A stretch of DNA of 63,882 nucleotides from Gracilinanus agilis (lineage: Eukaryota). Numbering within the stretch: the first letter of the stretch is position 1; the number at the start of each line of letters is the position of its first letter. This document shows, piece by piece, positions 561-55,689 of this stretch. The translations under genes were made by a program, and so were the position numbers. Below the pieces are notes generated by a model. It searched no databases. It was not told the DNA's origin and was given only the letters and a program-made list of their open reading frames with translations. The DNA is taken from assembly GCF_016433145.1 (NCBI RefSeq), contig NC_058132.1, positions 132,867,805 to 132,931,686 on the forward strand. Direction: 5' to 3'.

Positions 561-905
561 CCCTAACAGACTTGTATCAAGTAGTCAGTCAGTCAAAAAA
601 CAATTATTAAGTAATGTTATGAACCAAGTATTATATTAAGAGCTGCAAATGCAGAGGAAGGCAAAAGAGAATCCCTTCTCTCAAGGAACTCACTTTTCAA
701 TGGATGAGACAACATGTAACCAATTATGTGCAAATAAGCTAGCTGTATACAGAATAAATTGAAAATAATCAACAGAGGGAAGACAATAGCATTAAGGGGA
801 TCAGGAATTGCTTCCCATGGGATTTTAGTTGGGACTTGAAGGAAGCCAGGGAAACCAATAGGCAGAAATGAGGAGGGAGAAGAGACTATGAAAATGCCTA
901 AAGTT

Positions 906-1437
906 GGGAGCATGGAGGTGTCTCAGTCAGGCCTGGAGATGAGGGGTTCTGGCTTTATATCTGGCCTCTGACACAGCTGTGAGACCCAGGGCAAGTCATT
1001 ATACCCTCTAGCCTTTACTAATCTTCTACCTTGGAACCAACACACACTATTGATTCTATTGTGAGGAAGATTAATAAATGAGCATTTAGGAGACTTAGCA
1101 GGCAGGGCTGAAGAAAACCTATTAATAGGCATGACAGATTAAGATGCAGCAAAAAAGTTAGAGGAAGTGAAATTAGAAAGTAAGAGAACAGGAGAACAGT
1201 GTCATGGAAACCTACAGAGAAGAGTATCAAGAAGAGGGTGACCAACAGTGCAGAGGCTGTAGAGGTCAAGGAAGAGAAAAAAGAAAAAGCCATTAAATCG
1301 TTTTTATCTTTTTTTTAGTTTTTTAAATGAATAGATTGTTAGTAATCTTTCAGCCCTGCCTGCTAAGTCTCCTAAACACTCATTTATTAATCTTCCTCAC
1401 AACAATTCTAAGATAGAAGGTAAAGGTTTAAAAGAAA
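906..1437 (+). mobile_element. SINE1_Mdo-type SINE split by a 344-bp insertion
   Basis: SINE body 906-1058 and tail attctaagatagaaggtaaaggtttaaaa 1405-1437. Degenerate 16-bp TSD gaaaatgcctaaagtt (890-905) / gaaaatacttaaagtt (1438-1453). Confidence 0.8.
1059..1402. other. Inverted-repeat-bounded insertion carrying a copy of 2379-2609
   Basis: 1059-1112 and 1349-1402 are reverse complements at 52/54. Interior 1121-1350 matches 2379-2609. Flanks are tgattcta (1051-1058) and caattcta (1403-1410). Confidence 0.9.
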
Positions 1438-2044
1438 GAAAATACTTAAAGTTATGAGATGGAGTGTCTTGTTCATGGAACAATAAGAAGTCCAGTGTCA
1501 CTGGATCAGAGTACATGGAAAGGATGTAAGGAATAAGAAGAATGGAATGATGTGTGGGAAACAGGTTAGGATTCATATTTGATTCTAGAAGTGAGAGGGA
1601 GTCGCAAGAGTTTATTGAATATGGGATTACATGATCAAACCAGTGCTCTAGGAAGATCACTTTGGCAGCTGAGTGGAGAGGATAAATTAGAGCAGGGAAA
1701 CATGGTAGACAGCCCAACCAGCAGGCTATTGCAATAGTCCAGACTTGATGTAATGAGGATCCCCCAGAGTGGTGCCAGTATCAGAGAAGTCAAAGAGGTA
1801 CATATAAAAATGTCTAAAAAGGAGGGGAAACAGGATTAGATGGGATGGATGAGAGTGAGAAGTCAGGAACACCTAGGTCACAAGCCTGGATGACTGAGAA
1901 GAGGGTGATACCCTCAACAATAGTAGGAAATTAGGAAGAGGAAAGGATTGGAGAGTGGGAAGAAGATAATGAGTTCAGTTTTATACATGATGATTTTAAG
2001 GTATAATATAGGACATTCGGTTAGAGATATCCAATAGTCTAGAG

Positions 2045-2227
2045 CAGTGATGGGCAAACTATTCCCCGTGGGCCAGATCCAGGCTGTAGTTTTCCCATCA
2101 CTGCCTTAAGCAATTCCCTAATCACTACTTCTGGATGTGGGGGCATAGTGATTAGGGAATTGCTTAAGACAGTGATGGGCCAACTATGGCCTGGATCTGG
2201 CCTACAGGAATAGTTTGCCCATTCCTG
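2045..2227. mobile_element. Non-autonomous hAT (Charlie-type) MITE, palindromic
   Basis: TIR cagtgatgggcaaacta / tagtttgcccattcctg, 8-bp TSD gtctagag / gtctagta, and two further internal TIR copies. Confidence 0.9.
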
Positions 2228-2749
2228 GTCTAGTAGTTAGGGCTGCTAGCTAGATAAGTAAATTTAAGTATTATCATCATAGAGATGATAACAATCCATG
2301 GAATAGATTAGATCATTAAGTGAAATAGAATAGAGGTAAGGGAGAAGAGAGTCCATGATAGAACCCTGTGGGACACCCATTAATATGCATGACTTAGATT
2401 AAGGTGCAGCAAAGGAGATAGAGGAAAGGAAATTAGAAAGTAAGAGAACAGGAGAACAGTGTCATGGAAACCTACAGAGAAGAGTATCAAGAAGAGAGTG
2501 ATCAGCAGGGCAGAGGCTGTAGAGGTCAAGGAAGAGAAAAAAGAAAAAGCCATTAAATCATGTTTACCTTTTTTTTAGATTTTTAAATGAATAGATTGTT
2601 AGCAACTTTGGAGAAAGTACTTTTGCTTGAATGATGAGGTCAGAAGCCAGACAGTAGAGAGTTAAGAAAGAGTGAAAGGAAATAAAATTGAGAAACCAAT
2701 TGTAAATAGCCTTCTTGAGTTTAGCCTAAAAAGGGAAGAGAAACATATG

Positions 2750-2900
2750 AGATGTCAAATATGACTTCAGACTATTCCTAGCTGTGTGACCCTAGACAAG
2801 TCACTTAACCCCCAATTGCCTATGCCCTTACCATTCTTTGGCCTTGGAAATAATACTTTGTATTGATCCTAAGGGAAAAAAATAAGGATTTTTTAAAAAG
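2750..2900 (+). mobile_element. SINE1_Mdo-type SINE, 5' truncated
   Basis: tagctgtgtgaccctagacaagtcacttaacc...gccttggaaataatactttgtattgatcctaag plus A-rich tail. Confidence 0.75.
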
Positions 2901-9077: not shown

Positions 9078-11055
9078 CTTTTTAACTTTTTTATATCATT
9101 TTATATGCCAATTAAAAGGCATTTATTTTCTTTTCTACTTAGCTACCCCACTAAGGAAAAAGAAAAACAGACTCCTTATAAAAATATGTATAATCAAACG
9201 GAATAAATCCCTACATTGTCCCCATCCAGAGTTGCATCTCATTTGCTTCTTGAACCCAACACTTCTTTCTTAGGTTGTGAGTAGCAGAGATCATCACCTG
9301 TCTTCTGGAATCATGGTTGGTCACTGCATCAATGAGGTATATTAAGACTTTCAAAGCTGCTTGTCTTCATAGTGTTACTGCATAACTATTACTTCTGGCT
9401 CTGATTGCTTCACTCTTCACTCATACAGATCTTCCTAGGTTTCTCAGAATCAGTCCTTTTTGCAATTTCTTATGGCACAATAATTCTTATAGTGTTAACT
9501 TGCTCTATTCACTAATAAATAGGCATCACCTTAGTTTTTAGTTTTTATCACCATAAAGAGACGAGTTGCTATAAGTATTTTTACATATATGGGTGCTTTC
9601 CCTCTTTCTTTGATCTCTTTGGGGTATAGGCCGAATAGAGGTTTTACCTTGTAAAAAAGTACACAACATTTTGTAACTTTGGGGGCATGGTTCCAAATTG
9701 CATTCCAGAATGCTATACTGATTCATAGGTCAACCTCAACAATGCAATCATATGCTTATTTTCCTGCAGCCTTTCTAGCATTTGTCATTTTCCTTTTCTC
9801 TAATCTTTGACAATCTTACAAGTATGCAGCATGATGTCAGAGTTGTTTTAATTCTAGTTATTAGTGTTGGGATGATTTTTTCATTTAACTATTGTTTAGG
9901 TGTTTTCTTTGAAAAGTATTCATATTTTGCAACATTTATCAACTGGGGGATATATGTTATTCCAGTAAATTTGAACCAGTTTCTTATATATCTTAAACAT
10001 GAGATGTGTATCAGATAATCTTACTACAAAAATTGTTTATCATTTAACTCTTTTCTTTCTAATTTCAGCTGCATTACTTTTATGTATGCAACATGGGTTT
10101 TATTGGTAATAAACAGATACACTAATGATTTGCATAGATTTCTTTTTATATCCTCCAACTTTAAGTTATTATTTCAGTTATTTAGTTGATTAACTAGGGT
10201 ACTCAAATCAGTACATCATCTGAAGGAAGAGATAACTTTTTCCCTTTTTTTGCCTGTATTTATTCCTTTGCTTTCTTTTTTAGCTGTTGTTGCATTTTTA
10301 ATACCATATTAAATAATTAGGCTGATAATGAACATCTCTGCTTTATTCTGAATCTTAGTGGAATGATCTCTAATTTACTCTCATTACATAAAATGTTGGC
10401 TATTGATTTAAGATAAATACTACTTACTCATACTAAGAAAAGGTTCATTTATTCCTAAGTGTCCAGTGTTCATAATTTTTTTTAAAACAGAAATGGAAAA
10501 TATATCTCATCAAAAACTTTTTCTGCATCTACTGATATAATTTTTGGGGGGATTTCTTGGTTCTTATTATCATATGGTCATTTTTGTTAAAGTTTTCCTA
10601 ATATTAAACTCTGTATTTCTGATATGGATAAATCTGGTCAGAGCATATAATTTTATACTTTGCCTGTAGCTTCTTTGCTAATATTGTATTTAAAATTTTT
10701 GCATCAATGGTTATTGGGGAAATTGAGCTATAGTTTTCTTTCTTTCTTTTGACTCTTCTGATTTCAGAATCAAGATCATATTTGTGTTATAGACGGAATT
10801 TGCTGGAATCCTTTCTTTTTCCATTTTTTGCAAATATTTTTTTTTAATTTTAGCATTATTATTTGATAGTTTTATGGAATTCACTTATAAGTCCATCTGG
10901 CCTGGGTTTTTTCATTGGAAGTTCATTTTTATCTAATTCAATTTCTTTTTTTGGGGTTATCTAAATTCTCTATTCCTTGTTTGGTTAATCTGGACCTTTT
11001 ATGTTTTTGTAAATATTCATCACTTCCAGTTTTATTGACACATAGTTAGGCAAAA
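9078..11055 (-). mobile_element. Ancient marsupial L1, highly diverged
   Basis: T-rich antisense L1 3' UTR and ORF2 remnants (ctctttggggtatagg, ttccaaattgcattccagaatg, gatcatatttgtgttatag). Confidence 0.8.
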
Positions 11056-11385
11056 TGCCTTTTTTGGCAGGAAATATCTCTTTAGGAAAGAGAGTGACAG
11101 AGGAACAAAGATATTTAATTACATATAAGTTTCTATTTTCACAATAAGATTTCTGGCTCCCTGTTTAAGAAAGTCAAGTATTATCTGGGCAAAATAATTT
11201 TGAATAATTTGAATAAGAACTATGAGACAAAAGTAAGATAAAGCATGTCAGTCATGAAATGCTTGACTAGAAAAGATGGTGGGCTCTGTAATGTGGAAAG
11301 AGGGAGGGATACTCCATAAGCATCTGGGTAATGTCAGGAGAATGAAAGGAAGGCTCCCATCAAGATAGGAAGACTCTTTTATTTT

Positions 11386-11572
11386 TTTAAATTAACCCTT
11401 ACCTTCTGTCTTAGAATTGGTACTAAGTATAGATTCTAAGGCAGAAGAGTGTTAAAGATTAAGCAATTGGGGCTCAGGGTCACATAGCTGGAAAGTGTTT
11501 GAGGTCAAAATTGAATCTAAGTCCTCCAAACTCCAGGCCTGATGCTCTATTCACTGTGTGACCTAGATGCCC
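11386..11572 (-). mobile_element. SINE1_Mdo-type SINE (older)
   Basis: acccttaccttctgtcttagaa...ctccaggcctgatgctctattcactgtgtgacctagatgccc. Confidence 0.85.
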
Positions 11573-12184
11573 AGAGAGGTAGACTTATTGTGGATAATTT
11601 TCAGGACAATAAGAGTTTCAGCTATATCATTGGAGGGAGTAGCCATTCTGAAGAGAATATAGATTCATTCAAGTATGGAAATGCCAGTAATAGTAACAAT
11701 GACATCCTTCTTCCACTAGAGTCCTCCTCGGATTCTTGAAATGACCCTGCAGTCTCAAATGCTATAGTCAAAGAGAATGAAAATTCTGGTAGATCCCACC
11801 AAGTTGGAAGTCTTCTTTTATGAACCTGGTAATGATTTATCTGCTGTTGAATAAGGACCAGTCCTACAAAGTGTTAGATGACCATCACTTGTAGGTTGAT
11901 TGTCAAATAAAGGATATTTTTGGCAATAGTGACTCATAAAGTGTCACAATCAATGAGGGAGGAGTCAGAGGAAGGAGCTGCAATAAAATCATCGATGTCC
12001 CAAACTAGTAATAATGCTAATGAAGCTCATATGGCATATAATATTTTATGTTTTTAGAACATTGCTTTTTTTCTTAACTCACATATTTACTTCAGGAACT
12101 TCCTATTCTATCTACTTCTTTCACTTCTCTATTTGCCTTGACCACTCTATTAGTAATGGAATTATTAATAGTAATTAGCAATGA

Positions 12185-12325
12185 TGATGTCAAGAATTTT
12201 AGCACAATGGGTAGAACCCTGTGGAGGATTTATGGAAAGGTATATACTGGACTTGCAGAGGAGCCTATGGCTGGGGTTTGAGGAATACTCACATACATCA
12301 ATGAGATTACTGATCTATTGAAATA
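12185..12325 (+). mobile_element. RTE LINE 3' end (ancient marsupial RTE); may extend upstream to about 11573
   Basis: tgggtagaaccctgtggaggatttatggaaag and ggaatactcacatacatcaatgagattactgatctattgaaata resemble the marsupial RTE 3' terminus as I recall it (peptide TLWRIYGK vs PLRKIYGR). Confidence 0.6.
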
Positions 12326-12374
12326 AGAATAAAAAATAATAACCTCATATTTGCTCATTTTATTCCACTCCCTT

Positions 12375-12376
<2 letters not shown>

Positions 12377-12417
<41 letters not shown>
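12377..12417. repeat. (CA)n microsatellite
   Basis: About 20 uninterrupted AC units. Confidence 0.98.
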
Positions 12418-12418
<1 letters not shown>

Positions 12419-15400
12419 CTCCTTGAAAGCAGGGACTGTGTTGTTCATCTTTCCATTTACCATATTCCCCAATAGTGTCTCACAACATATATTGAATGAA
12501 TACGTGAATTGATTTTTTCCCCTTTTCAAAGTACTTACGTGTAATGTTTTCTTTGAACTTTCTGAGCTTAGTGTCTCTTGGTGCCACTAAACGTCACTCC
12601 AAAAGTATGTAGTTGATTAAATTTTATTTGAGGCAATACGACCCCAGTAGGGCTTCAGAACAACACAGGAACGGCTTTAGTGCCATCGTCCAATATCAAG
12701 GTATTAAGTAGAAATTAGCCCATGGAAGGATATCAGTGCCTTAGTATTTTAGCCATTGTCATCAAGGCTGACCTTCATTTTTTCCATTGACTGGAATGAG
12801 GCCAAGGGCAGGAGGCTCACATTAGCACTCTTCACACATACACCAGCTAAGAATGAAAGCCCGGCATAGGGGAGGGGCAGAACTTTTTGATTCTTTTATG
12901 TTGAATCTCTTTTGTGCTTAACTACACTCTCAGCTCCCTCCATCTGTTGTACCCAGTGTCTAGCTGACAATGCAGCTGGGTTGCCTCTGCCTGAACGATG
13001 GAAGGGGAAAAAAAGAAATGGGGAAATGGGATGTTTGCTTTGGCATGAGGGTTTTAATAATCCTCCCGAGTGCACAAATTTTACCTTCCTCCTCTATTAA
13101 ATCCCAAGAAATGACTTTTCTTAGTAAAGGGGAGGAAATTAGCAGGGAAATAGACTTGTTATGTTTTAGTATAGTTATTCTTGGAGGAATAGAATCAATT
13201 GGCAAACAGAGGAATGTGCCCAAGGATGTTCATGGCTCTTTAGGGTGTATGCAGGGAAGTCACAAGGGATTAACTAATTTTCCTTTCGTTATGATACAAC
13301 TTTGTTTAACCCACATTAAAAAGAATTACCAAGCTATTACCATCTATCCCCCAACAGCTGGTATCAGTTATTTTACAAATGTGTAATGCCTAAAAACTGA
13401 TTTCAGTAAAAAATTTCCATTTGTTTCAAAGTCAGGCATTGAGAGAGAAAAATAGGAAACCCTGATCTGACTTTTCCCTTGATCGTACTCAGTAGTAGGT
13501 CTGTATGTCATAGACCTATGATTTCATCCATGTGAAATGTCCCTTTGGTCTTATCTGCCTGAGATTCAAATAGTTAAGTGATTTGCCCATGGTCAGAACT
13601 AGTTAGGTGGCTTCTTGACTCCTACCCAGCCCTATATCTATTCCACAATGCTGGCTTCGAGATTTAAATGCCTTTCATTTTTATGGATGTTCACAGTCAG
13701 TCAAAATGAAATATGACACTAATTGCATGACCCTAGCCATCACTTAACTTCTACTTGTCTCAGTTTGCTCATCAGTAAAATGGAGGTAATAAATAATAGC
13801 ACCACTTCACAGGGATGTTATGAGAATAAAATAAAATGATATTTGTAAAGCACTTTGCAAATCTTAAAATGCTATAAAATGGTTGCTATTATAATAACCC
13901 TATTAGGTTTAAGTTGAAGCCGTGGCCCCTAACATCCCTGACCTTTTTACATGATTGCTAATTGTACGGTGAATGTGATTCTAAGGGAATAAAAAGCACC
14001 TATCACACATTTACTATGAACAGAAGCACTCTGCTAAGAACTAGGGATATATATTTTTTAAATGTCAGCTCTAACTCTCAAGAAGCTCACATTCTAAGTG
14101 GGGGAGATAATATATTTTGGAAGTTTTAGGGTTCTATTCTCAGTGCATCTGAAAGAACAAAGCCTCCAGTCCGATGTAAGATCACTAGCTTCAGGCATGA
14201 GAGTCAACCTCAAGTCCAGTCCTTGATCTTAAAATGGATTTTTGCCTTTAAATCTAAAATGCTTTACATGGTAATAGAAAGTCCCTTTTATATCTCCCCA
14301 AAGGGTGACCTCATAGGACAAATGTCAGAAGAGGAAGAAATTGGGATATGGGACCAATACCAGAGAAAAGGTGATGAAACTACATGACAAGCACAGAGAT
14401 AAAACCTGCTCTCATTCTGCAGCTTGGTATTTCTTGATGAAGGGCTTTGTTCTCCAACACTGCAAAGGTCTTCTATCACTCTAATGCTCTCATCATAGAA
14501 GATTCATTGGGACATTCAGCCACTATTACTGTTGCAAAAGCACAGATTGAAATTCCTTTGCAGGTGTGCTGTGAAATAACTCATGCAAAATTCCGTGCTT
14601 AAATATTTGAGGGATGAGATTGGGTGTTAAAGGTATCATAAATACTCTCAGAATGACTATTTTGTCATAAGGTAACTAACTGTCCTTTACTTTGGGCACT
14701 TTTTTTTAGAACAATTTTTTTTAAAGAAGACTCTCTATTCTTATCATTTCTTTCCTAGTCTGCTTTTCTTTGTGCCTTCCCTCTGAAACCGTCCCCAGTT
14801 TATCCTGCCTGTATCTTCTTTGTACATTAGTTTTACATGTTATTTCCCCCATTGGACTAGGAATTCCTTGACATCAGGGACCAAGTCACTGTTTTTTGTT
14901 TGTTTGTTTGTTTTCTCTTTGTATAATCCCATTGCCTCGCATAGTGCCTGGCACTATGCTTAATGTTATATTGCATGAGTTAATATATTAACACTTCATG
15001 AAGATGGGGGTGTGCCAGGCCTTTCCCTTTCCATACCCCTCTATTACTATCATAGGGCAGAGGAGGACCACTTAAAAGTTTGTCACATCCTATGAAACTC
15101 CTGGTCCTTTTACTACTGGCTCATAATTCAAGGAGAACTAACTAGCTCTTCAACCTCCAATAAGGTGGGCCAGAACTAGAAAAGACAACTCTAAGCATAT
15201 TCCATGGGAAGACCCCTGTTATAATCAAATCACCAGGATTTGCAACACATGAAATTATGCAGAAGTCATATTTAATACTTATCTCCTCTTCCTTTTTTAA
15301 GTTGAATTTCTGGTTATTTTTAGATGTTTTTTATAATCATGGAGAAAGCATACAAAACCTAAGTACTGTGAGTTTAAGCAATATCTCCCCCCAAACAGGA

Positions 15401-15429
15401 ACCTGTTGAAAGAAAAAAATCTTTTCTTT

Positions 15430-15835
15430 TGTGCTTTAATTAATGAGGGAAAACTCAAGACAAAGGAAATTAGAAGGAGTTTATTACAAATAAATCAAGG
15501 TAGCACATCATAGATGAACTTACTGCCAGAGATCAGCAAATTTTCAGGACAGGGCAGGTGCGTTATAGTACATCTTCTGAGATGAGATAAAGAAAAATTT
15601 GATAGTTTCACATTAGCAAAAGAGGTTGGGCTCTTGCAACTCAATTCCTCTCCTAGTACAGGACAATCTGCACAGGCAGGATAAGTGGAACACGTGGGAC
15701 AGGTGGGACATGTTGGGGTAGTTGACTTATGCTATGTGCCAAATCTCAGAAGATGAAGATTTAGTCATATCTCTTCCCCCAATACCTATTGACCAGCAGG
15801 CCTGGGAACAATGAGTCACTGAACCAAAATACTTT
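15430..15835 (-). mobile_element. Possible LTR-like fragment
   Basis: Antisense LTR-like layout: tttatt near the left end, mixed-GC body, ggtgggac repeats. Ends not resolved. Confidence 0.35.
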
Positions 15836-15844
15836 CAATAAACT

Positions 15845-16312
15845 TTAGAGGTCAAAGAAATGGAGTCTGCAGGTTGTGCTGATTCTATCTTAAACAAGAA
15901 GTCAGCATTCCCCTCCCATCCAAATATTGTTATGAGATTAGCTAGTGACCTCCTACCTCCACCACCAAGGATGTTACCTATAGAGAAACATTCATGCTGG
16001 AACGGACTTAATCTTGAGCAGCATCAAAGTTACTTCAAAGTTAAGACATGATCCTCAATCCCCAAATCACCTGATCTCTTGTCCCATCTAAAAGGAAGAA
16101 TAAGGAAAGTAGCTATGCAACCTCACCTGCTAGGCATCTTTTGTCTTCCTCTTAACGCTCTCTGTAAATCCCTATATGTGTGTGTGTGTGGATCTCCCTC
16201 TGTTCTTCAGAGTTACTAGCCACTTGGCAACTGCCCATCTCAGAATACTAATTAAACTTTAAATTTTTTATCTTCTAGTCTTTCCTCTTGATTTATTGTT
16301 TTTAGGTCAAAA
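15845..16312 (+). mobile_element. Probable solo LTR
   Basis: Starts agaggtcaaagaaatggagtctgcagg, has cctatatgtgtg and a downstream attaaa signal, ends tttaggtcaaa. Confidence 0.5.
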
Positions 16313-16840
16313 GGACCATGATGGGAAGAATTACTCTCCTGGAAGATTTTATAATCTCTGGGATGAAGAATTTTCCAATAGGATCATAAATAATAGAAGT
16401 TTAGATTTAGAATGGATGGGACATTAGATATTTTCAGATCCAACTCCTTCATTTTATTCACGTCAAACTCAAGACCTAAAGAGTGAGCTCGGTATTCTAC
16501 ATGCCCCAAGTTTCTGCATATTCTGTTTCACAACTTCACAACATGGGTTGGCAAAGACTCTCTCTTTTTTTTTTAAACCTCTCTTTCTAGATCCCTAGTT
16601 GGTCTGAGATCAAGGCGTGATTAGAAAATAATGAAGAATAATTCTCTATTACCTGATCAACCTACCTATATTTTAGAATTTGCTGACTTTTATTAGATGA
16701 TCTTTCAGTCCCTTCCAGTTCTAAAAATTTCTATGACTGACTTCACATATCCTGCCCTTGGATGTGACAGTATTATTCTTTTTGGTTAGAAATTTAGCAT
16801 AACTGAAAACTCATTCTAGTCTATACTAAAAAAAAAATGC

Positions 16841-17051
16841 TTTTTTTTTAAAAAAACCTTTACCTTCCATCTTAGAATCAATACTGTGTTTTGGTTCCAA
16901 GGTAGAAGAGAGGTAAGTAAGGGCAAGGCAATGGGGGTTAAGTGACTTGCCCAGAGTCACACAGCTAGGAAGTGTCTGAGGCCAAACTTGAACCTAGGAC
17001 CTCCTGTCTCTAGGCCTGGCTCTCAATCCACTGAGCTACCCAGCTGTCCCC
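16841..17051 (-). mobile_element. SINE1_Mdo
   Basis: Full antisense consensus ending gagctacccagctgtcccc, with T-rich tail. Confidence 0.95.
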
Positions 17052-17199
17052 TAAAAATTTTTTTTTGATAATTATATTTCAATATAATTGGTTTCCTTTG
17101 TAATCCTATGTATTTTGTCTTGTGCACAGTCTAAAGTTTCCATTAGGCTTCACCAAGATTGCCAAAGAAGTTTGCAACAGAAAGAGGTCAAGAACCCTT
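17052..17199 (-). mobile_element. Ancient hAT (Charlie4-like) fragment
   Basis: atttcaatataattggtttcctttgtaatcctatgtatttt...ggcttcaccaagattgccaaag...ggtcaagaaccc. Confidence 0.7.
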
Positions 17200-17699
17200 T
17201 GGTTCTTAATTCACATATATAGTTTTGTGTATGTATATGAATTTTTGTTTTTGCCTTTTTTGTTTTCTTTGGAGGCAAGAAGTGTTACCAAAACTTAGAG
17301 GACTTTGATACCAAAAACAGAGAGGGAGGCAAGGAGAGCAGTACAATTATTCTTCTCCCATCTGCAAATAGAGCAGTATGTAAGCTGCTTTAGGGGGGAA
17401 ATATTCCCAGCTCCTTAGAGCCCCCACAGCCCCCAAAAATGAATTTTTAAAAATAGGCTCAGGGCTTTAAAAACATTCTTCATCTCAGATTCCAGACTAT
17501 CCCAAAATGGTAAAATTTGATACTTGCTTTCCATTTGAAACTGAGTTTAAGAGCCTTTCTCACAAATGCTTTTTAGGGAATAATTATAAATCTGCATACT
17601 CTGAGTGGGCTGAGCTGCCTGGAGATGGTAGGCTAAGGGGTTTGGCCAGAGCTTTCCCAGGAGTACTTTACAAAAGAATATTTACTTGATGAATAACAA

Positions 17700-17960
17700 A
17701 AACCATCTGCCCAATTCATCATTAAGTGGAAGTGATTTCAGGTCCTTGGTGCTGAGTTGGAGGAGGGGAAGCAGTTAGCATTAATTGTCAACATTTTAAT
17801 GGGTAAAACCAGGCCTAAGATGAATGGGGGAAGTGAGCTAGTATCATGCTATTTTGCATGAGCAGCCTCATTTGCATGGGCTATTAGGAGACTATTTACA
17901 TTCTAATTACAGGCTATTTGAATATTGCATTTATATTCTAATTACAGGCTTTTAGAAAGC
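17700..17960. promoter_or_regulatory. Candidate enhancer (octamer, ETS and TAATTA cluster)
   Basis: Unique sequence with ATTTGCAT 17870-17877, GGAAGTG at 17728 and 17829, and a duplicated 22-mer containing TAATTA. Confidence 0.4.
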
Positions 17961-18959
17961 TCATTTGTTTTCAAGGGAGAGCTTTGGTTTTAGAAGAATA
18001 AAAGATGCTGCATTCTGGACTCCTCTGAAGCCTGGGATGCTCATTGATCCTAGGAGAGCTGCCAGCCTTGGCACTTCAGAAAGCCAGTTTTAGTATTTAA
18101 GAAATCTAAATGACAGGAATGACTGACATGAATGAGTCTGTTGGGGTACATGGGGAAGGAGAAGGATTACAATTCCCTACATTTAGTTATGACCCTTTGG
18201 GCAAGTCTTTGGCTCCCTCTGAGCCTTGCTTCTCTCTTCAGTAAAACAATTTCCCTTCTCCGGTCCTTTCAACTTCTGAGTGTCTTTACAACCTCTAGAA
18301 ATCAGATTCAGACATGCAGAGTTTATTCTGAAACTTCTGCCTTTTTAGACATCTGTGGCTCCTCAAATCATAACAATTACTATAGAACCAGTCTGAGATT
18401 AGAAAAAAGAAACATATTCACAAACAAATTAGAACTGCCAGGGCTAGAGAATACATAACAATAGTTAAAGGCTCCCAGATTTTGTTGGTAGAAGTAATTC
18501 TTCCAGGAATATACATATGATTGCTGCAGTAACTCAATAGGTAAATTTCTATGAGTTGTTATAGTTAAAAAATGCATCACTGTAAGCAATGGAGTGATGT
18601 CTTTCTGAGTTTAAGTAGCCTGGTCCTCATACGATAGAATGATATCCTTCATTGGACCCCCTCTCAAGGTCTGTCCAACCTGGTAGGATTTACCAGAGTT
18701 CCTGTTCTATTTGTTCAAATAAGACAATATTTATAAAGCACTTAGCAGAGGGAATAATAATTTATTTTTGGTGAAGCATGACTAATTTAATGTCTTCAAA
18801 GCCTTGAACTCAATCATACAGTGAGGAAGGGGCTAGGGAACTTCTTTCAGGAAGGAACTTGAGCTAGAACCACTGGCGGCAGCATCACAAAGAGGAAAGG
18901 GAAGGGATAGAAAAAGCTTTTTTTTAAGCACCTACTTGTTGAAGACCCCATGGTAACAG

Positions 18960-19500
18960 CCATAGTGAGCAAATGTAATCTGGATGAAGATTCAGCATAG
19001 AAGACTGAGAATTAACAATAAGAAAGATAGAAGTACCAGGAGTGGACAGTGTCACAGAAATCTAGAAAGAAGAGAATATCAAGGAAAAAAGGATGATTCA
19101 TAGTGTCAAAGGCCGCAGAAAGATCACAATGGATGAGGAAAGTGATAATTAGTCATTTTAGAGGTAGTGGTTTCAGTTGAATGATAAGAATAGAAACTGG
19201 ACTGTAGAATTAAGAAGAGAATGAGAAAAAAGAAGTGACGACATCTGTAGTAGACCACCTTTTCAAGGAGTTTAGCTACAAAAGAGAAGAAAGATATAGG
19301 ATGATATGTAATAAAGATGGATGAATCAAGTGATGATTTTTTGAGGATGGGGAGAAATGAACATGTTTGTAGGCTATAGGGAAGCAGTCTGTAATAGATA
19401 GGAAGTGATTAAAGATAAGAGCAGAGATTATATATGATATATTTTGCTGAAGAAGACAGAATAGAATGGGATCACATGTACATATAAATGGTTTTGCTTT
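18960..19500 (-). mobile_element. L2 fragment
   Basis: cagtgtcacagaaatctagaaag...agtgtcaaaggccgcagaaagatc...ttcaaggagtttagc. Confidence 0.75.
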
Positions 19501-20010
19501 AGCAAAGAGAAAACTCACCTCTTCTTTTTCTTCTTCAACTTTTCTTTTTTCTTTTTTGTTGTATTTTTTCACATGTTGATATAACTTTTAATAATCAGTT
19601 TTTGACATTTTATAATCCATGTTCTCTCTCTCTTTTCCTTGTTCCCCCCACCCTGATGAGATAACATATATTATGATATAGGTTACACATGTGCTATCAT
19701 GCAATAGATATTTCCATGTTCAGCATGTTGCGAAAGACATATTGCTTATTAAAAAAAAAAAACCTCATGGAGACAAAGTGAAAAATAGTGCACTTCAATC
19801 TGCATTCAGACCCCATTGGTTCTTTCTTTGGTGGTGGATAGCTTTTTTCATCATGAGTCATTTGGAGTTGTCTGAGATCCTAGCATTGCTGATAATAGGT
19901 GAGTCATTCATAGTTGATCATTGTATATTATTGTTATTACTGTGTACAATGTTCTCCTGGTTCTACTCACTTCACTTTGCATCACTTCATATAAATCTTA
20001 CCAGGAATTT
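19500..20010 (-). mobile_element. Old L1 3' end
   Basis: gtgtacaatgttctcctggttctactcacttcactttgcatc and other antisense L1 3' UTR motifs. Confidence 0.8.
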
Positions 20011-20199
20011 TTAGGGCTACTTCTTTATGAGAGACACAAACGAAGGAGGATATAGTTTCAGAAAGCAAAAAGTAATATGTGGTGAAGAAGAGAGGTAAAG
20101 AGGGAATTCTTTGCAAATGGCCTTAATTTTTTCAGTGAAATATGAGTTTGGGTTCTCAGCTGAGAGGGTGAGGGAAAGGGAAGCTTTGAGAAGTTTGAG

Positions 20200-20860
20200 G
20201 AGGCAATTCTTTTTGTGGTAACAAAGTAGATATCCATCAACTGGGAAATGGCCAAACTGTGGTACAAGAAAATGAAAGAATATTATTATGCCATAATGAA
20301 TATGAAGAATTCAGAGAAGTTTGGAAAGACTTAGATGAAGTGGAGCAGAAAAAAAAAACAAGCATAGCCAGAAAAAAATTATGTTCGGGGGCAGCTGGGT
20401 AGCTCAGTGGAGTGAGAGTCAGGCCTAGAGACAGGAGGTCCTATGTTCAAACCCGGCCTCAGCCACTTCCCGGCTGTGTGACCCTGGGCAAGTCACTTGA
20501 CCCCCATTGCCCACCCTTACCAATCTTCCACCTATGAGACAATACACCGAAGTACAAGGGTTTAAAAAAAATTAAAAAAAAATTATGTTCAATGACTACA
20601 ATGACTACAATTGAAGACACCAAAAATATGAAACTGAACTCTATGTTATTATAATGACTCAGCTTGGCCCCAAAGAAGAGTTGAGGAAAGATACCTCCCT
20701 CTCTTCATCATAGAGGTGGGAACTATTGATTTGGAATATTATAAACTCCTCTCAAACTTATTTTTACTGAACTACCTTTGTTTCCCATTTCTAGTTTTAT
20801 TATTATTACTATAATTTGTTTCAAGACTGGCTTGCTAAGTAAGGGAGGCTAAGAGCAGGG
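20200..20860 (+). mobile_element. Old L1 3' fragment hosting a young SINE
   Basis: ccatcaactgggaaatggccaaactgtggta...gaatattattatgccata...ggaaagacttagatgaa. Confidence 0.7.
20387..20575 (+). mobile_element. Young SINE1_Mdo
   Basis: Full length, CpGs intact (aacccggcc, cccggctg, caccgaag), TSD aaaaaaattatgttc. Confidence 0.97.
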
Positions 20861-21119
20861 ATTCTAGGATTACAGATCTAGAAGTGAATGGGACCTTATA
20901 GGTCATTTAGGCCAATTCTCACATTTTACAGATGAGAAAATTGAGACCCAGAGAGGGTAAATTGCTTTCTGAAGTGGCATAATAACATAAGTGGCCCAGC
21001 TAAGATTTAAATTCGCTTTCTATTCCTACAAATTGAACATATTCCCCTGTACCATATTCCCTCCCAATATCTAACTTTTGATAATACTTTTATATTGATG
21101 TTTTTTAAGTAGTAAATTT

Positions 21120-53950: not shown

Positions 53951-55689
53951 TGATCTCAGACCCTTATTATTAATGTGAGACCATGGACAAGTCACTTAAA
54001 TTCTGCTTACTTCAGTTTCCTCATCTGTAAAAAGAAGATAATAATAGTATGTACCTCCCAAGATTTTTGTGAGGATCAAATAAGATAATACCACCAAAGG
54101 TACTTATTACAGTGCCTGGTACAAAATAGACTTTATATAAAATTATTATTATTATTAATTGAACATTTAGGGCCTCAATTATTTTATCTGTAAAATAAGA
54201 AAATTGAATTAAATGACTTCTAAGATCCCTTCTTGTAATAGATAAGTGATCTTATAATTGTGTTCATTCCCCCTGATATAGGGCCATCACTACCCTGCCT
54301 TTGGTCTGGAACCCTGGCATGTCTTTTATCAACTTAGTGAAAAAGACTAAGAGAGTCAATGGTCTGTCTAGGGCTACTATACAGCTAATTCAAAAAGCTG
54401 CCTGAACAGCAAGTTTTCTTCTCACAAGTAGCATTGGGAGAGTAGCCATTTTCTCAGTGGCCTACTCTGTCAGCTCTAAGATTTGGTGATCTTAAGTTAC
54501 AGAATTAGCAAGTGACTCCTAACTTTCAGCTTCAGCAAATCTGTTCAGTGAACACAGACCATACTGTACAGGATCATTAAGATAGTGTTGTGATCCTCAA
54601 AGTGAGCTGACACATGCCAGTGGTAAGACTCGCTAGGATGGGAAGGGGCAATCTCTAGTACTGGGGAAAGGAGGGAAGGATTTGGATCCTAATCCAAGGA
54701 ACTTTAAACCAATGAATGATCTGGGTAAGAGCCTGGATTTCTTTGAAAAGCCAAAATCCAAGGGGCTAAGATAGAGCAAGAATCTGGGCATTAACAGCTT
54801 AAGACTAGCATGCCAGCTTCTGAGTAAATTTTGCTAGTAAGATTATAAATTGCACAGCAGACATACATTACACATAGACTACTAGTTCTTGAAATTTTCA
54901 CCCATATAAACTCATAAAATACCATCTACTAAGGCAAAATTGTAATTAGTTATTGAACTCCCTAGTCTGGCATTCAAGACCCTATACTCTTTGGTCAAAC
55001 CTGTCTTTACAATATTTGCTTCTATTATTTTCCCATATTTACAAAATCAATGGATTGCAGAATTTGCAAGTTAGAAGGGACCTTTTAGGCCATCTAGCCC
55101 AACCCTTACCCAAAAGGAATCTCCCATTATAATCTGCCCAATCACTATAATCTACCAATTTTAATATATCCAACAAATAGTTATTCAGGTCCTATTGAAG
55201 ATCCATGGTCTTCATACACTGCTTTTTGAGGCAAGACATTCTCTTTTAATTAACTCTAATTGTTATGAATTTTCCCCCCAATATTAAACCTAAACATGTC
55301 TCTTTGCAACTTGGCTCCCGGTTCCTCCTTCTGGAGTCAGATGAACAAGTCTTAATCCCTCTTTAACAAGTCATCTAAAAATGGATGTCTCATAGACATC
55401 TTAACCTTAGTATATCCAGAGCTGAACTCATCATTCCTTCCAAACCCTTCTTTCTACCCACTTCTCTATTAATGTTGAGGACACCCCCAGGACCATAACA
55501 GTAAAGTCACTTTAAAAAAGAGGGCTTGGGATACTTTTTTATTTTTATTACTTATTATGTGATGGCCAGATGTGATACTGCCCTGAATATATTAAAGAAA
55601 CATTCCCAGCCATGGTTAGATTGAGATAAATCACTCTAGTTTTAATGACACTGAAGGTATGATAAGAAATCCTGCCCTCATGTATTTGT

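What the first reader, a model, noticed from the sequence alone, without database searches (positions are those of the whole stretch)
1051..1410. Pack-type mini-element: 54-bp inverted ends, 8-bp TSD, cargo captured from 1.26 kb away
Seen: a SINE is split by a 344-bp insert. Its ends, 1059-1112 (ttgtgaggaagattaataaatgagCAtttaggagacttagcaggcagggctgaa) and 1349-1402, are reverse complements at 52/54. The only difference is CA vs TG, as expected if one CpG decayed on opposite strands. The flanks TGattcta and CAattcta show the same CA/TG pattern, so they read as an 8-bp target duplication of an ancestral CGattcta. The interior 1121-1350 copies the local L2 segment 2379-2609, including its private T-rich insertion, so it is not an independent L2 copy. 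Junctions show short microhomology (cttt on the right). Established: TIRs plus an 8-bp TSD are typical of hAT, Merlin and P elements, and cargo capture by template switching during gap repair is the standard model for Ds and Pack-MULE elements. Inference: this is either an unrecognised marsupial DNA-transposon family caught acquiring neighbouring DNA, or a one-off fold-back/MMBIR repair product. The terminal TTGTGAGG does not fit the usual hAT CAG/TAG start.
Basis: partly seen in the sequence, partly recalled or inferred. Interest (0 to 1): 0.82.

Follow-up and report, generated by a model that had tools for sequence, protein, structure and literature searches.

The report
Inverted-repeat element refilled with neighbouring DNA
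A small mobile element with 54-base inverted ends sits inside a marsupial SINE, and its middle was replaced by a copy of DNA from 1.26 kb away; this is a clean but ordinary example of repair-driven "cis gap filling", a process already catalogued in animal genomes.

Summary
Arms 1059-1112 and 1349-1402 are reverse complements at 52/54. They enclose a 93% copy of 2379-2609, and the insert splits a SINE without deleting any SINE bases.

Two points change the reading.
- The arms are multi-copy. In a whole-genome contig set their summed word depth is about 10,000-21,000, against about 25 for single-copy flanks and 40-160 for the interior. One contig carries an arm in a different context. So this is a resident member of a repeat family, not a single-copy fold-back.
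- The claimed 8-bp duplication from an ancestral CG is not supported. All six other SINE copies in the window read TG at that site. The duplication is 6 bp perfect, 8 bp at 6/8, or 4 bp perfect with TGT..ACA-type ends.

The best reading is a single-copy "Pack-TIR" made by break repair that switched template to nearby DNA. Tan et al. 2021 (PMC8277862) described 370 such cases, most of them within 5 kb of the parent. Nothing shows that the chimera ever moved.

The superfamily is unidentified, and the hAT terminal motif is not met. First-stage notes of this scan list many unchecked TGT..ACA fold-back elements elsewhere in this genome, but none is shown to share these arms. Interest is low to moderate.

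The parts
925..1058 (+). 5' part of the host SINE (tRNA/CORE-type marsupial SINE), interrupted by the insert
   Evidence: Aligns with ten other SINE copies in the window and continues without loss after the insert.
1051..1058 (.). Left copy of the flanking duplication (TGATTCTA); the last 6 bases, ATTCTA, are repeated exactly on the right
   Evidence: The SINE consensus at this site is TGATTCTA.
1059..1112 (+). Left inverted arm, 54 nt, member of a multi-copy family
   Evidence: 52/54 complementary to the right arm. Summed word depth in X1 is 11,296 at 1084 and 21,526 at 1088, against about 25 for single-copy contigs. The X1 flank contig ends at 1088.
1113..1120 (+). Left junction, about 8 nt of uncertain origin (5/8 match to the source in register)
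   Evidence: Pairwise alignment. No other template was found in the window.
1121..1350 (+). Cargo: copy of the L2-like segment 2379-2609
   Evidence: 93.0% identity, K2P 0.074, and a shared private T-rich stretch. Depth is near single-copy level (40-160).
1349..1402 (-). Right inverted arm, 54 nt; its first two bases (TT) overlap the end of the cargo (microhomology)
   Evidence: Mean depth is 11,617 in bin 1337-1403. X4 record 26 carries 1344-1402 in another context and its match stops at 1402.
1403..1410 (.). Right copy of the flanking duplication (CAATTCTA)
   Evidence: It differs from the left copy at its first two bases.
1411..1445 (+). 3' tail of the host SINE
2379..2609 (+). Parental segment, part of a continuous old L2-like repeat that extends beyond both ends of the copied piece
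   Evidence: Other L2-like copies align across both boundaries of the copied segment.

Best explanation
A short non-autonomous mobile element with terminal inverted repeats of about 54 bp inserted into a SINE by a staggered cut. It belongs to a family present at several hundred arm-equivalents in this genome. The cut duplicated 4-8 bp of target.

Later, a double-strand break inside the resident element was repaired by DNA synthesis that switched template to an L2-like segment 1.26 kb downstream on the same chromosome. The break came either from excision followed by abortive gap repair or from breakage of the hairpin-prone centre. The synthesis rejoined through short microhomology, so the original interior was replaced by about 230 bp of neighbouring DNA.

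The result is a single-copy 'Pack-TIR' made in place. Nothing indicates that it moved afterwards.

Shown: the structure, the local origin of the cargo, the flank duplication and the multi-copy arms.
Inferred: the order of events, the repair route and the superfamily, which stays unknown.
For: - Structure and statistics of the arms.
- The SINE is uninterrupted apart from the insert, and 6 bases are duplicated exactly.
- The cargo is 93% identical to the neighbouring segment against about 70% for other family copies, and it shares that segment's private T-rich stretch.
- A 2-4 nt microhomology lies at the right junction.
- Arm depth in X1 is 9,948 and 11,617 (bin means). Single-copy contigs have about 25 and the cargo 40-160.
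- Depth roughly doubles from 11,296 at 1084 to 21,526 at 1088. This is expected if family copies split into CA and TG variants at the decayed CpG and merge again inside it.
- The X1 flank contig stops at 1088 = 1058+30. A 31-mer graph must branch there if 1059 onward recurs elsewhere.
- X4 record 26 carries the arm with unrelated sequence on both sides (all).
- Arm divergence (2/54) is compatible with cargo-source divergence (16/229; Fisher P = 0.54).
- Published precedent: 370 animal Pack-TIRs, 57% within 15 kb of the parent and mostly under 5 kb, median microhomology 2 bp, attributed to transposition-independent gap filling (PMC8277862).
Against: - No second copy of the arm lies in the 64-kb window, so the family has not been seen directly as inverted pairs with their own duplications.
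- The depth figures are sums of contig mean depths and are not copy numbers (tool caveat).
- The depth and contig evidence does not show that other copies end at 1059 and 1402; they could continue into a larger repeat.
- The termini (TTGTG..CACAA) fit no 8-bp-duplication superfamily I know, and the 8-bp duplication is only 6/8.
- The left junction has 8 nt of unclear origin.
- The arms have no non-CpG difference, where about 3.4 would be expected from the cargo-source rate (P = 0.03).
Confidence: 0.6

Rival explanations
1. Same two-step history, but the arms are retroviral-type (LTR-end) termini and the original insert was a fold-back mini-element integrated by a retroviral or Ginger-like integrase. 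In this reading the element spans 1057-1404, its ends are TaTTG...CAACA (TGT..ACA with one G>A change), and the duplication is a perfect 4 bp (ATTC). The palindromic centre then broke and was refilled from nearby DNA.
For: With the insert taken as 1057-1404 the flanks share a perfect 4-bp ATTC, and the right end reads CAACA. This needs one substitution, against two for the 8-bp reading. First-stage notes list more than a dozen fold-back elements with TGT..ACA ends, long inverted repeats and 4-bp duplications, some read as paired LTR ends, elsewhere in this genome (unchecked). TGTNR termini are shared by LTR elements and Ginger transposons (PMC2836005). The 54-bp stem gives a very stable hairpin (-128.5 kcal/mol, z = -11.4), a plausible fragile centre.
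Against: The left end reads TA, not TG. The exact duplication is 6 bp, so two bases must match the target by coincidence. The X4 contig's match to the right arm stops at 1402, not 1404. No LTR with this terminus was found in the window. The supporting notes are unverified AI notes. Ginger elements are not known as active transposons in mammals (PMC2836005).
Confidence: 0.18
2. A one-off complex repair product (fold-back or MMBIR-type serial template switching) at a break in the SINE. It copied a 54-nt piece of some dispersed repeat, then the L2 segment, then the 54-mer again in reverse. No transposition was involved.
For: The cargo is local and the junctions show short microhomology. The termini fit no known transposon superfamily. 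The depth data do not prove that other copies end where the arms end. Differences between cargo and source are clustered (P = 0.003), as error-prone repair synthesis could produce.
Against: Such events do not normally duplicate the target, yet here 6 bases are duplicated exactly with no loss of SINE sequence. The inverted repeat ends symmetrically at the duplication. MMBIR templates usually lie nearby, but no template for the arm exists in 1 kb upstream or 62 kb downstream.
Confidence: 0.13
3. An active Pack-type transposon: the element captured the L2 piece at or near 2379-2609 and then transposed 1.26 kb to its present site, so the chimera is or was mobile.
For: Cut-and-paste elements such as hAT favour linked sites (established knowledge). 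Inverted ends and a flank duplication are present.
Against: Cargo depth is near single-copy level (40-160, and it includes the source copy), so the chimera has not multiplied. In animals, multicopy Pack-TIRs are rare (4 of 370) and always distal to the parent, while near-parent cases are single-copy gap fillings (PMC8277862). No footprint is visible at the source.
Confidence: 0.07
4. The arms are merely an inverted pair of fragments of an ancient MIR-type SINE (they start with TTGTGAGGA, as does a MIR segment), or the structure is an assembly artefact.
For: A MIR copy at about 54066 begins with the same 9-mer.
Against: A profile built from 33 MIR-like copies in the window does not match the arms significantly (best E = 10). 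Ancient MIR copies would not give matches of 90% or more at 400-800 times single-copy depth. Contigs from two runs cross the left junction.
Confidence: 0.03

Closest known systems
Single-copy Pack-TIRs of animals made by cis gap filling (Tan et al. 2021, Nat Commun, PMC8277862)
   Same: Terminal inverted-repeat ends with a flank duplication; an interior replaced by non-family DNA whose parent lies under 5 kb away on the same chromosome; short microhomology at a breakpoint; a single copy. Two opossum cases are listed in that paper.
   Different: The cargo here is itself an old repeat (L2-like). The arms belong to a family I could not name. Only about 54 bp per end remain, whereas the published gaps are a median 4.6% of the element. 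No orthologous pre-capture element could be checked. It is neither of the two listed opossum cases, which lie on chr5 and on chr1 with its parent on chr6 and differ from this element in length.
Internally deleted P and Ac/Ds elements with filler DNA from abortive gap repair; Pack-MULEs of plants
   Same: Element ends are kept and the middle is replaced by copied host DNA through template switching (established knowledge; cited in PMC8277862).
   Different: Pack-MULEs have MULE ends and 9-10 bp duplications and are often multicopy and mobile. Here there is no sign of mobility after capture, and the duplication is 4-8 bp.
hAT non-autonomous elements (the dominant DNA transposons of opossum: 22,626 of 24,953 consensus TIR elements in Supplementary Data 2 of PMC8277862)
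   Same: A possible 8-bp duplication, small size and inverted ends.
   Different: The termini start TTGTG, not the usual YARNG. A 54-bp arm is long for hAT. The duplication matches at only 6 of 8 bases and does not fit nTnnnnAn (motifs recalled from the literature, not tested against a library).
Ginger transposons and LTR-retroelement termini (PMC2836005)
   Same: In one register the ends read TaTTG..CAACA with a perfect 4-bp duplication. Long inverted repeats (40-270 bp) occur in Ginger1.
   Different: The left end has A where G is required. Ginger1 targets CCGG or CCGT. No active Ginger is known in mammals, and no integrase was linked to this element.

Membership tests
Animal single-copy Pack-TIR (cis gap filling) | Both ends are termini of a TIR element family and are flanked by a target duplication | tested here: inconclusive
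   The inverted ends and a 6-bp exact (8-bp 6/8) duplication are present. The ends are multi-copy by depth. The family and its true termini were not seen directly.
Animal single-copy Pack-TIR (cis gap filling) | The interior is a duplicate of a non-family parental sequence | tested here: met
   93% copy of 2379-2609, with the shared private T-rich stretch.
Animal single-copy Pack-TIR (cis gap filling) | The parent lies in cis and close by (<15 kb) | tested here: met
   1,260 bp downstream, same orientation.
Animal single-copy Pack-TIR (cis gap filling) | Microhomology at a breakpoint | tested here: met
   At the right junction TT (up to CTTT) is shared by source and arm. The left junction is unclear.
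Animal single-copy Pack-TIR (cis gap filling) | An uninterrupted element at the orthologous site of an outgroup | not testable with these tools
   No other marsupial genome could be searched.
hAT superfamily | 8-bp target duplication | tested here: inconclusive
   TGATTCTA against CAATTCTA, 6/8. The SINE consensus is TG.
hAT superfamily | Termini of the YARNG type and short TIRs | tested here: not met
   The ends read TTGTG...CACAA and the arms are 54 bp. The motif is recalled from the literature.
hAT superfamily | A related autonomous copy with a hAT transposase | not testable with these tools
   No genome-wide search was available.
Integrase-type (LTR-end or Ginger-like) fold-back element | TGTNR...YNACA termini | tested here: inconclusive
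   The right end CAACA fits. The left end TATTG has one mismatch.
Integrase-type (LTR-end or Ginger-like) fold-back element | 4-bp (4-6 bp) target duplication | tested here: inconclusive
   A perfect ATTC in that register, but the exact repeat runs to 6 bp.
MMBIR or fold-back repair insertion | All templates nearby and no target duplication | tested here: not met
   No arm template lies in the window, and a 6-bp exact duplication is present.
MIR SINE fragment | Significant match to a MIR profile | tested here: not met
   A profile from 33 window copies gives a best E of 10 on the arm.

The most novel reading that the evidence does not exclude
The arms are retroviral-type termini (TGT..ACA, 4-bp duplication), and the element belongs to an undescribed class of integrase-mobilised fold-back mini-elements. 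First-stage notes suggest this class is abundant in this marsupial genome. Under this reading, the element here shows that their palindromic centres break and are refilled from neighbouring DNA.
Probability: 0.15. Interest if true: 0.7.

Novelty: new member of a known kind. Interest (0 to 1): 0.3.

Why it matters
This is a tidy natural record of double-strand-break repair by template switching inside a mobile element. The donor, the recipient, one junction with microhomology and a rough age (K2P 0.074) can all be read in 2 kb. That documents how inverted-repeat elements shuffle nearby DNA in marsupials, but the process is already established across animals.

The open point with some value is the identity of the arm family. 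It has several hundred copies, long arms, and termini that fit no 8-bp-duplication superfamily. If it proves to be an integrase-type fold-back family, that would be new for mammals.

Tried and rejected
- Exact scans of both arm halves against metagenome and viral contig collections gave no true hit. The single hit, L001, is a bacterial contig sharing only the 23-mer.
- Full-text search of papers for four arm sub-strings found nothing.
- Rfam gave nothing relevant on 801-2800.
- Exact-protein look-ups of two ORFs, tried in order to reach DNA upstream of the window or other assemblies, found nothing on record.
- MIR origin of the arms: a profile search was not significant.
- L1-mediated insertion was rejected: no A-tail at either end.
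- Tc1/mariner (TA), piggyBac (TTAA) and PIF (3-bp) insertions were rejected, because the duplication is at least 4-6 bp and is not TA or TTAA.
- An empty-site allele could not be assessed. The joints near 1058/1405 are other SINE copies, as their intervening letters show.
- Literature searches for inverted-LTR fold-back elements in marsupials found no description.

Full report
**Observation**

The window carries a 344-bp insert at 1059-1402 whose ends are 54-nt reverse complements matching at 52/54. No dinucleotide-preserving shuffle of 100 produced such a pair. The two differences are adjacent, at 1083-1084, and read CA against TG.

The interior 1121-1350 aligns to 2379-2609, 1,260 bp downstream in the same orientation. 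There are 16 mismatches in 229 aligned bases and two indels (93.0%; K2P 0.074). The source is part of a continuous old L2-like repeat. Other copies of that repeat in the window (about 18983 and about 42609) are only about 70% alike, and they align across both ends of the copied piece. The source has an extra T-rich stretch of about 45 nt that the copy at 18945 lacks, and the insert interior shares it.

The host SINE aligns with ten other copies in the window and continues across the insert without loss.

**Flank duplication**

The flanks read TGATTCTA and CAATTCTA. All six SINE copies in the window that cover this site read TG, so TG is the likelier ancestral state and the explanation is not supported.

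Three registers remain:
- **8 bp at 6/8**, with symmetric TT..AA ends. Two or more differences in 8 sites are not very unlikely at the local divergence (P = 0.10).
- **6 bp perfect (ATTCTA)**, with two extra bases (CA) at the right end.
- **4 bp perfect (ATTC)**, with a 56-nt inverted repeat whose ends read TaTTG..CAACA. These are TGT..ACA-type ends with one G>A change.

In every register target bases are duplicated and none are lost. That is the mark of a staggered-cut insertion rather than of plain break repair.

**Are the arms single-copy?**

The arm has no other copy in the 64-kb window. I laid the contigs of four public runs on 801-2800.

- Run X1 is a contig set of 3.2 Gb, a whole-genome set. 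Its contigs on unique sequence have word depth 22-29.
- In X1 the bins holding the arms have mean depth 9,948 (1069-1135) and 11,617 (1337-1403). The cargo bins have 40-160.
- Depth is 11,296 at 1084 and 21,526 at 1088. This roughly twofold step just inside the variable CpG site is what a family would give if its copies carry either CA or TG there and share the sequence beyond it (my inference).
- The X1 contig coming from the left flank (827-1088, no differences) stops at 1088 = 1058+30. A 31-mer assembly graph must branch at that point if 1059 onward recurs elsewhere with another preceding base. This is an inference: Logan's k = 31 is from my knowledge, and it agrees with the tool's 31-letter index.
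- Run X4 holds a 174-nt contig that matches only 1344-1402 (two differences), with unlike sequence on both sides.

Together these results indicate several hundred arm-equivalents at 90% identity or better.

Caveats: the tool warns that summed contig depth is not a copy number. None of these results proves that the other copies end where the arms end. Only one read-laying run was allowed, so I could not zoom in.

**Artefact check**

Contigs of X1 and X2 cross the left junction. The X2 contig (941-1168) differs by A>G at 1084 and 1088. No listed contig crosses the right junction.

**Mechanism**

A multi-copy inverted-repeat element sits in a SINE with a target duplication, and its interior is copied from 1.26 kb away. 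Tan et al. 2021 (PMC8277862) call this a single-copy Pack-TIR.

- They found 370 cases in 100 animal genomes, and 57% lie within 15 kb of the parent, mostly under 5 kb.
- Microhomology at the breakpoints has a median of 2 bp.
- They attribute these cases to transposition-independent gap filling after a break inside a resident element. Multicopy, truly mobile Pack-TIRs were only 4 of 370, and all were distal to their parents.
- Their table lists two opossum cases: one on chr5 (MER63_Marsup) and one on chr1 (MARINERNA8_MD) with its parent on chr6. Neither matches this element in size or layout.

Here the right junction shows TT (up to CTTT) shared by arm and source, and the left junction has about 8 nt of unclear origin. 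The arms' divergence (2/54) is compatible with that of cargo against source (Fisher P = 0.54). The cargo's near single-copy depth argues that the chimera did not multiply.

I therefore read the history as two steps: insertion of a family member, then in-place replacement of its middle by repair synthesis templated on the neighbouring L2 piece. The 54-bp stem makes a very stable hairpin (-128.5 kcal/mol, z = -11.4). A hairpin-prone centre is a plausible break site, and excision followed by abortive gap repair is the alternative trigger. The data do not separate the two.

**Two oddities**

- The cargo-source differences are clustered. Two clean runs of 68 and 50 bp give P = 0.003. Later gene conversion between the two copies, or error-prone repair synthesis near the junctions, could each explain this. 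If conversion occurred, the event is older than K2P 0.074 suggests.
- The arms show no non-CpG difference, where about 3.4 would be expected (P = 0.03). This could be chance or arm-to-arm conversion.

**Which family?**

This is unknown.

- hAT is the prior favourite in opossum (22,626 of 24,953 consensus TIR elements in Supplementary Data 2 of PMC8277862). But the ends TTGTG..CACAA do not fit the hAT terminal motif, and the 8-bp duplication is imperfect.
- The 4-bp register gives TGT..ACA-type ends, as in LTR elements and Ginger transposons (PMC2836005). First-stage notes of this scan list more than a dozen fold-back elements with TGT..ACA ends and 4-bp duplications, some read as paired LTR ends, on other parts of this genome. 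Those notes are unchecked and none is shown to share these arms, so I treat this as a lead and give it about 0.15-0.2.
- The arms share their first nine bases with a MIR segment, but a profile built from 33 MIR-like copies in the window does not match them (E = 10).
- Scans of external collections and of the literature for the arm sequence found nothing real.

**Verdict**

The element belongs to a repeat family, and the captured DNA is best explained by a known repair process, not by an active Pack-type transposon. It is a new member of a known kind. Interest is low to moderate, with one open question: the identity of the arm family. A genome-wide search would settle it in minutes.

Noticed in passing
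window 1084 and 1088: The X2 contig that crosses the left junction reads G instead of A at both sites. Position 1084 is the A of an A:C mismatch in the 54-bp stem, and 1088 sits in a TAG triplet; both are favoured ADAR contexts. X2-X4 are contig sets of 22-100 Mb, the size of transcriptome assemblies, yet they hold this single-copy locus at depth 2-16. The changes could therefore be A-to-I editing of a transcribed hairpin, or alleles (G at 1084 restores the CpG). The run type is not on record.
   Followed up: partly
window 2037-2235: Palindromic MITE-like element (arms 2065-2127 and 2146-2208 at 89%, outer arms 2039-2065 and 2207-2233) inside the L2-like repeat. It is very high-copy: summed depth is 61,000-269,000 by bin mean and up to about 380,000 at single positions in X1, against about 25 for unique sequence. 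It was also flagged by a first-stage note as a hAT MITE.
   Followed up: partly
window 1121-1350 vs 2379-2609: The 18 differences between copy and source are clustered, with clean runs of 68 and 50 bp (P = 0.003). This suggests gene conversion between the two nearby copies or error-prone repair synthesis.
   Followed up: partly
window 2173-2800 and 941-1168 + 2429-2800 (contigs of X1 and X2): Short-read contigs switch between the two copies of the duplicated segment. X1 record 8 carries insert-type letters at 2497-2509, and X2 record 11 jumps from 1168 to 2429. These are graph artefacts of the 69-bp identical run, not rearrangements, and they are a caution for anyone genotyping this locus from contigs.
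   Followed up: yes
window 817-853: A short stretch with very high contig depth (about 70,000 in X1) and sharp loose ends at 817-820 and 853. It is a fragment of another abundant dispersed repeat just upstream of the host SINE.
   Followed up: no
window 53975-54135: An ancient MIR-type SINE copy. A profile seeded from it finds 33 MIR-like copies in the window.
   Followed up: partly
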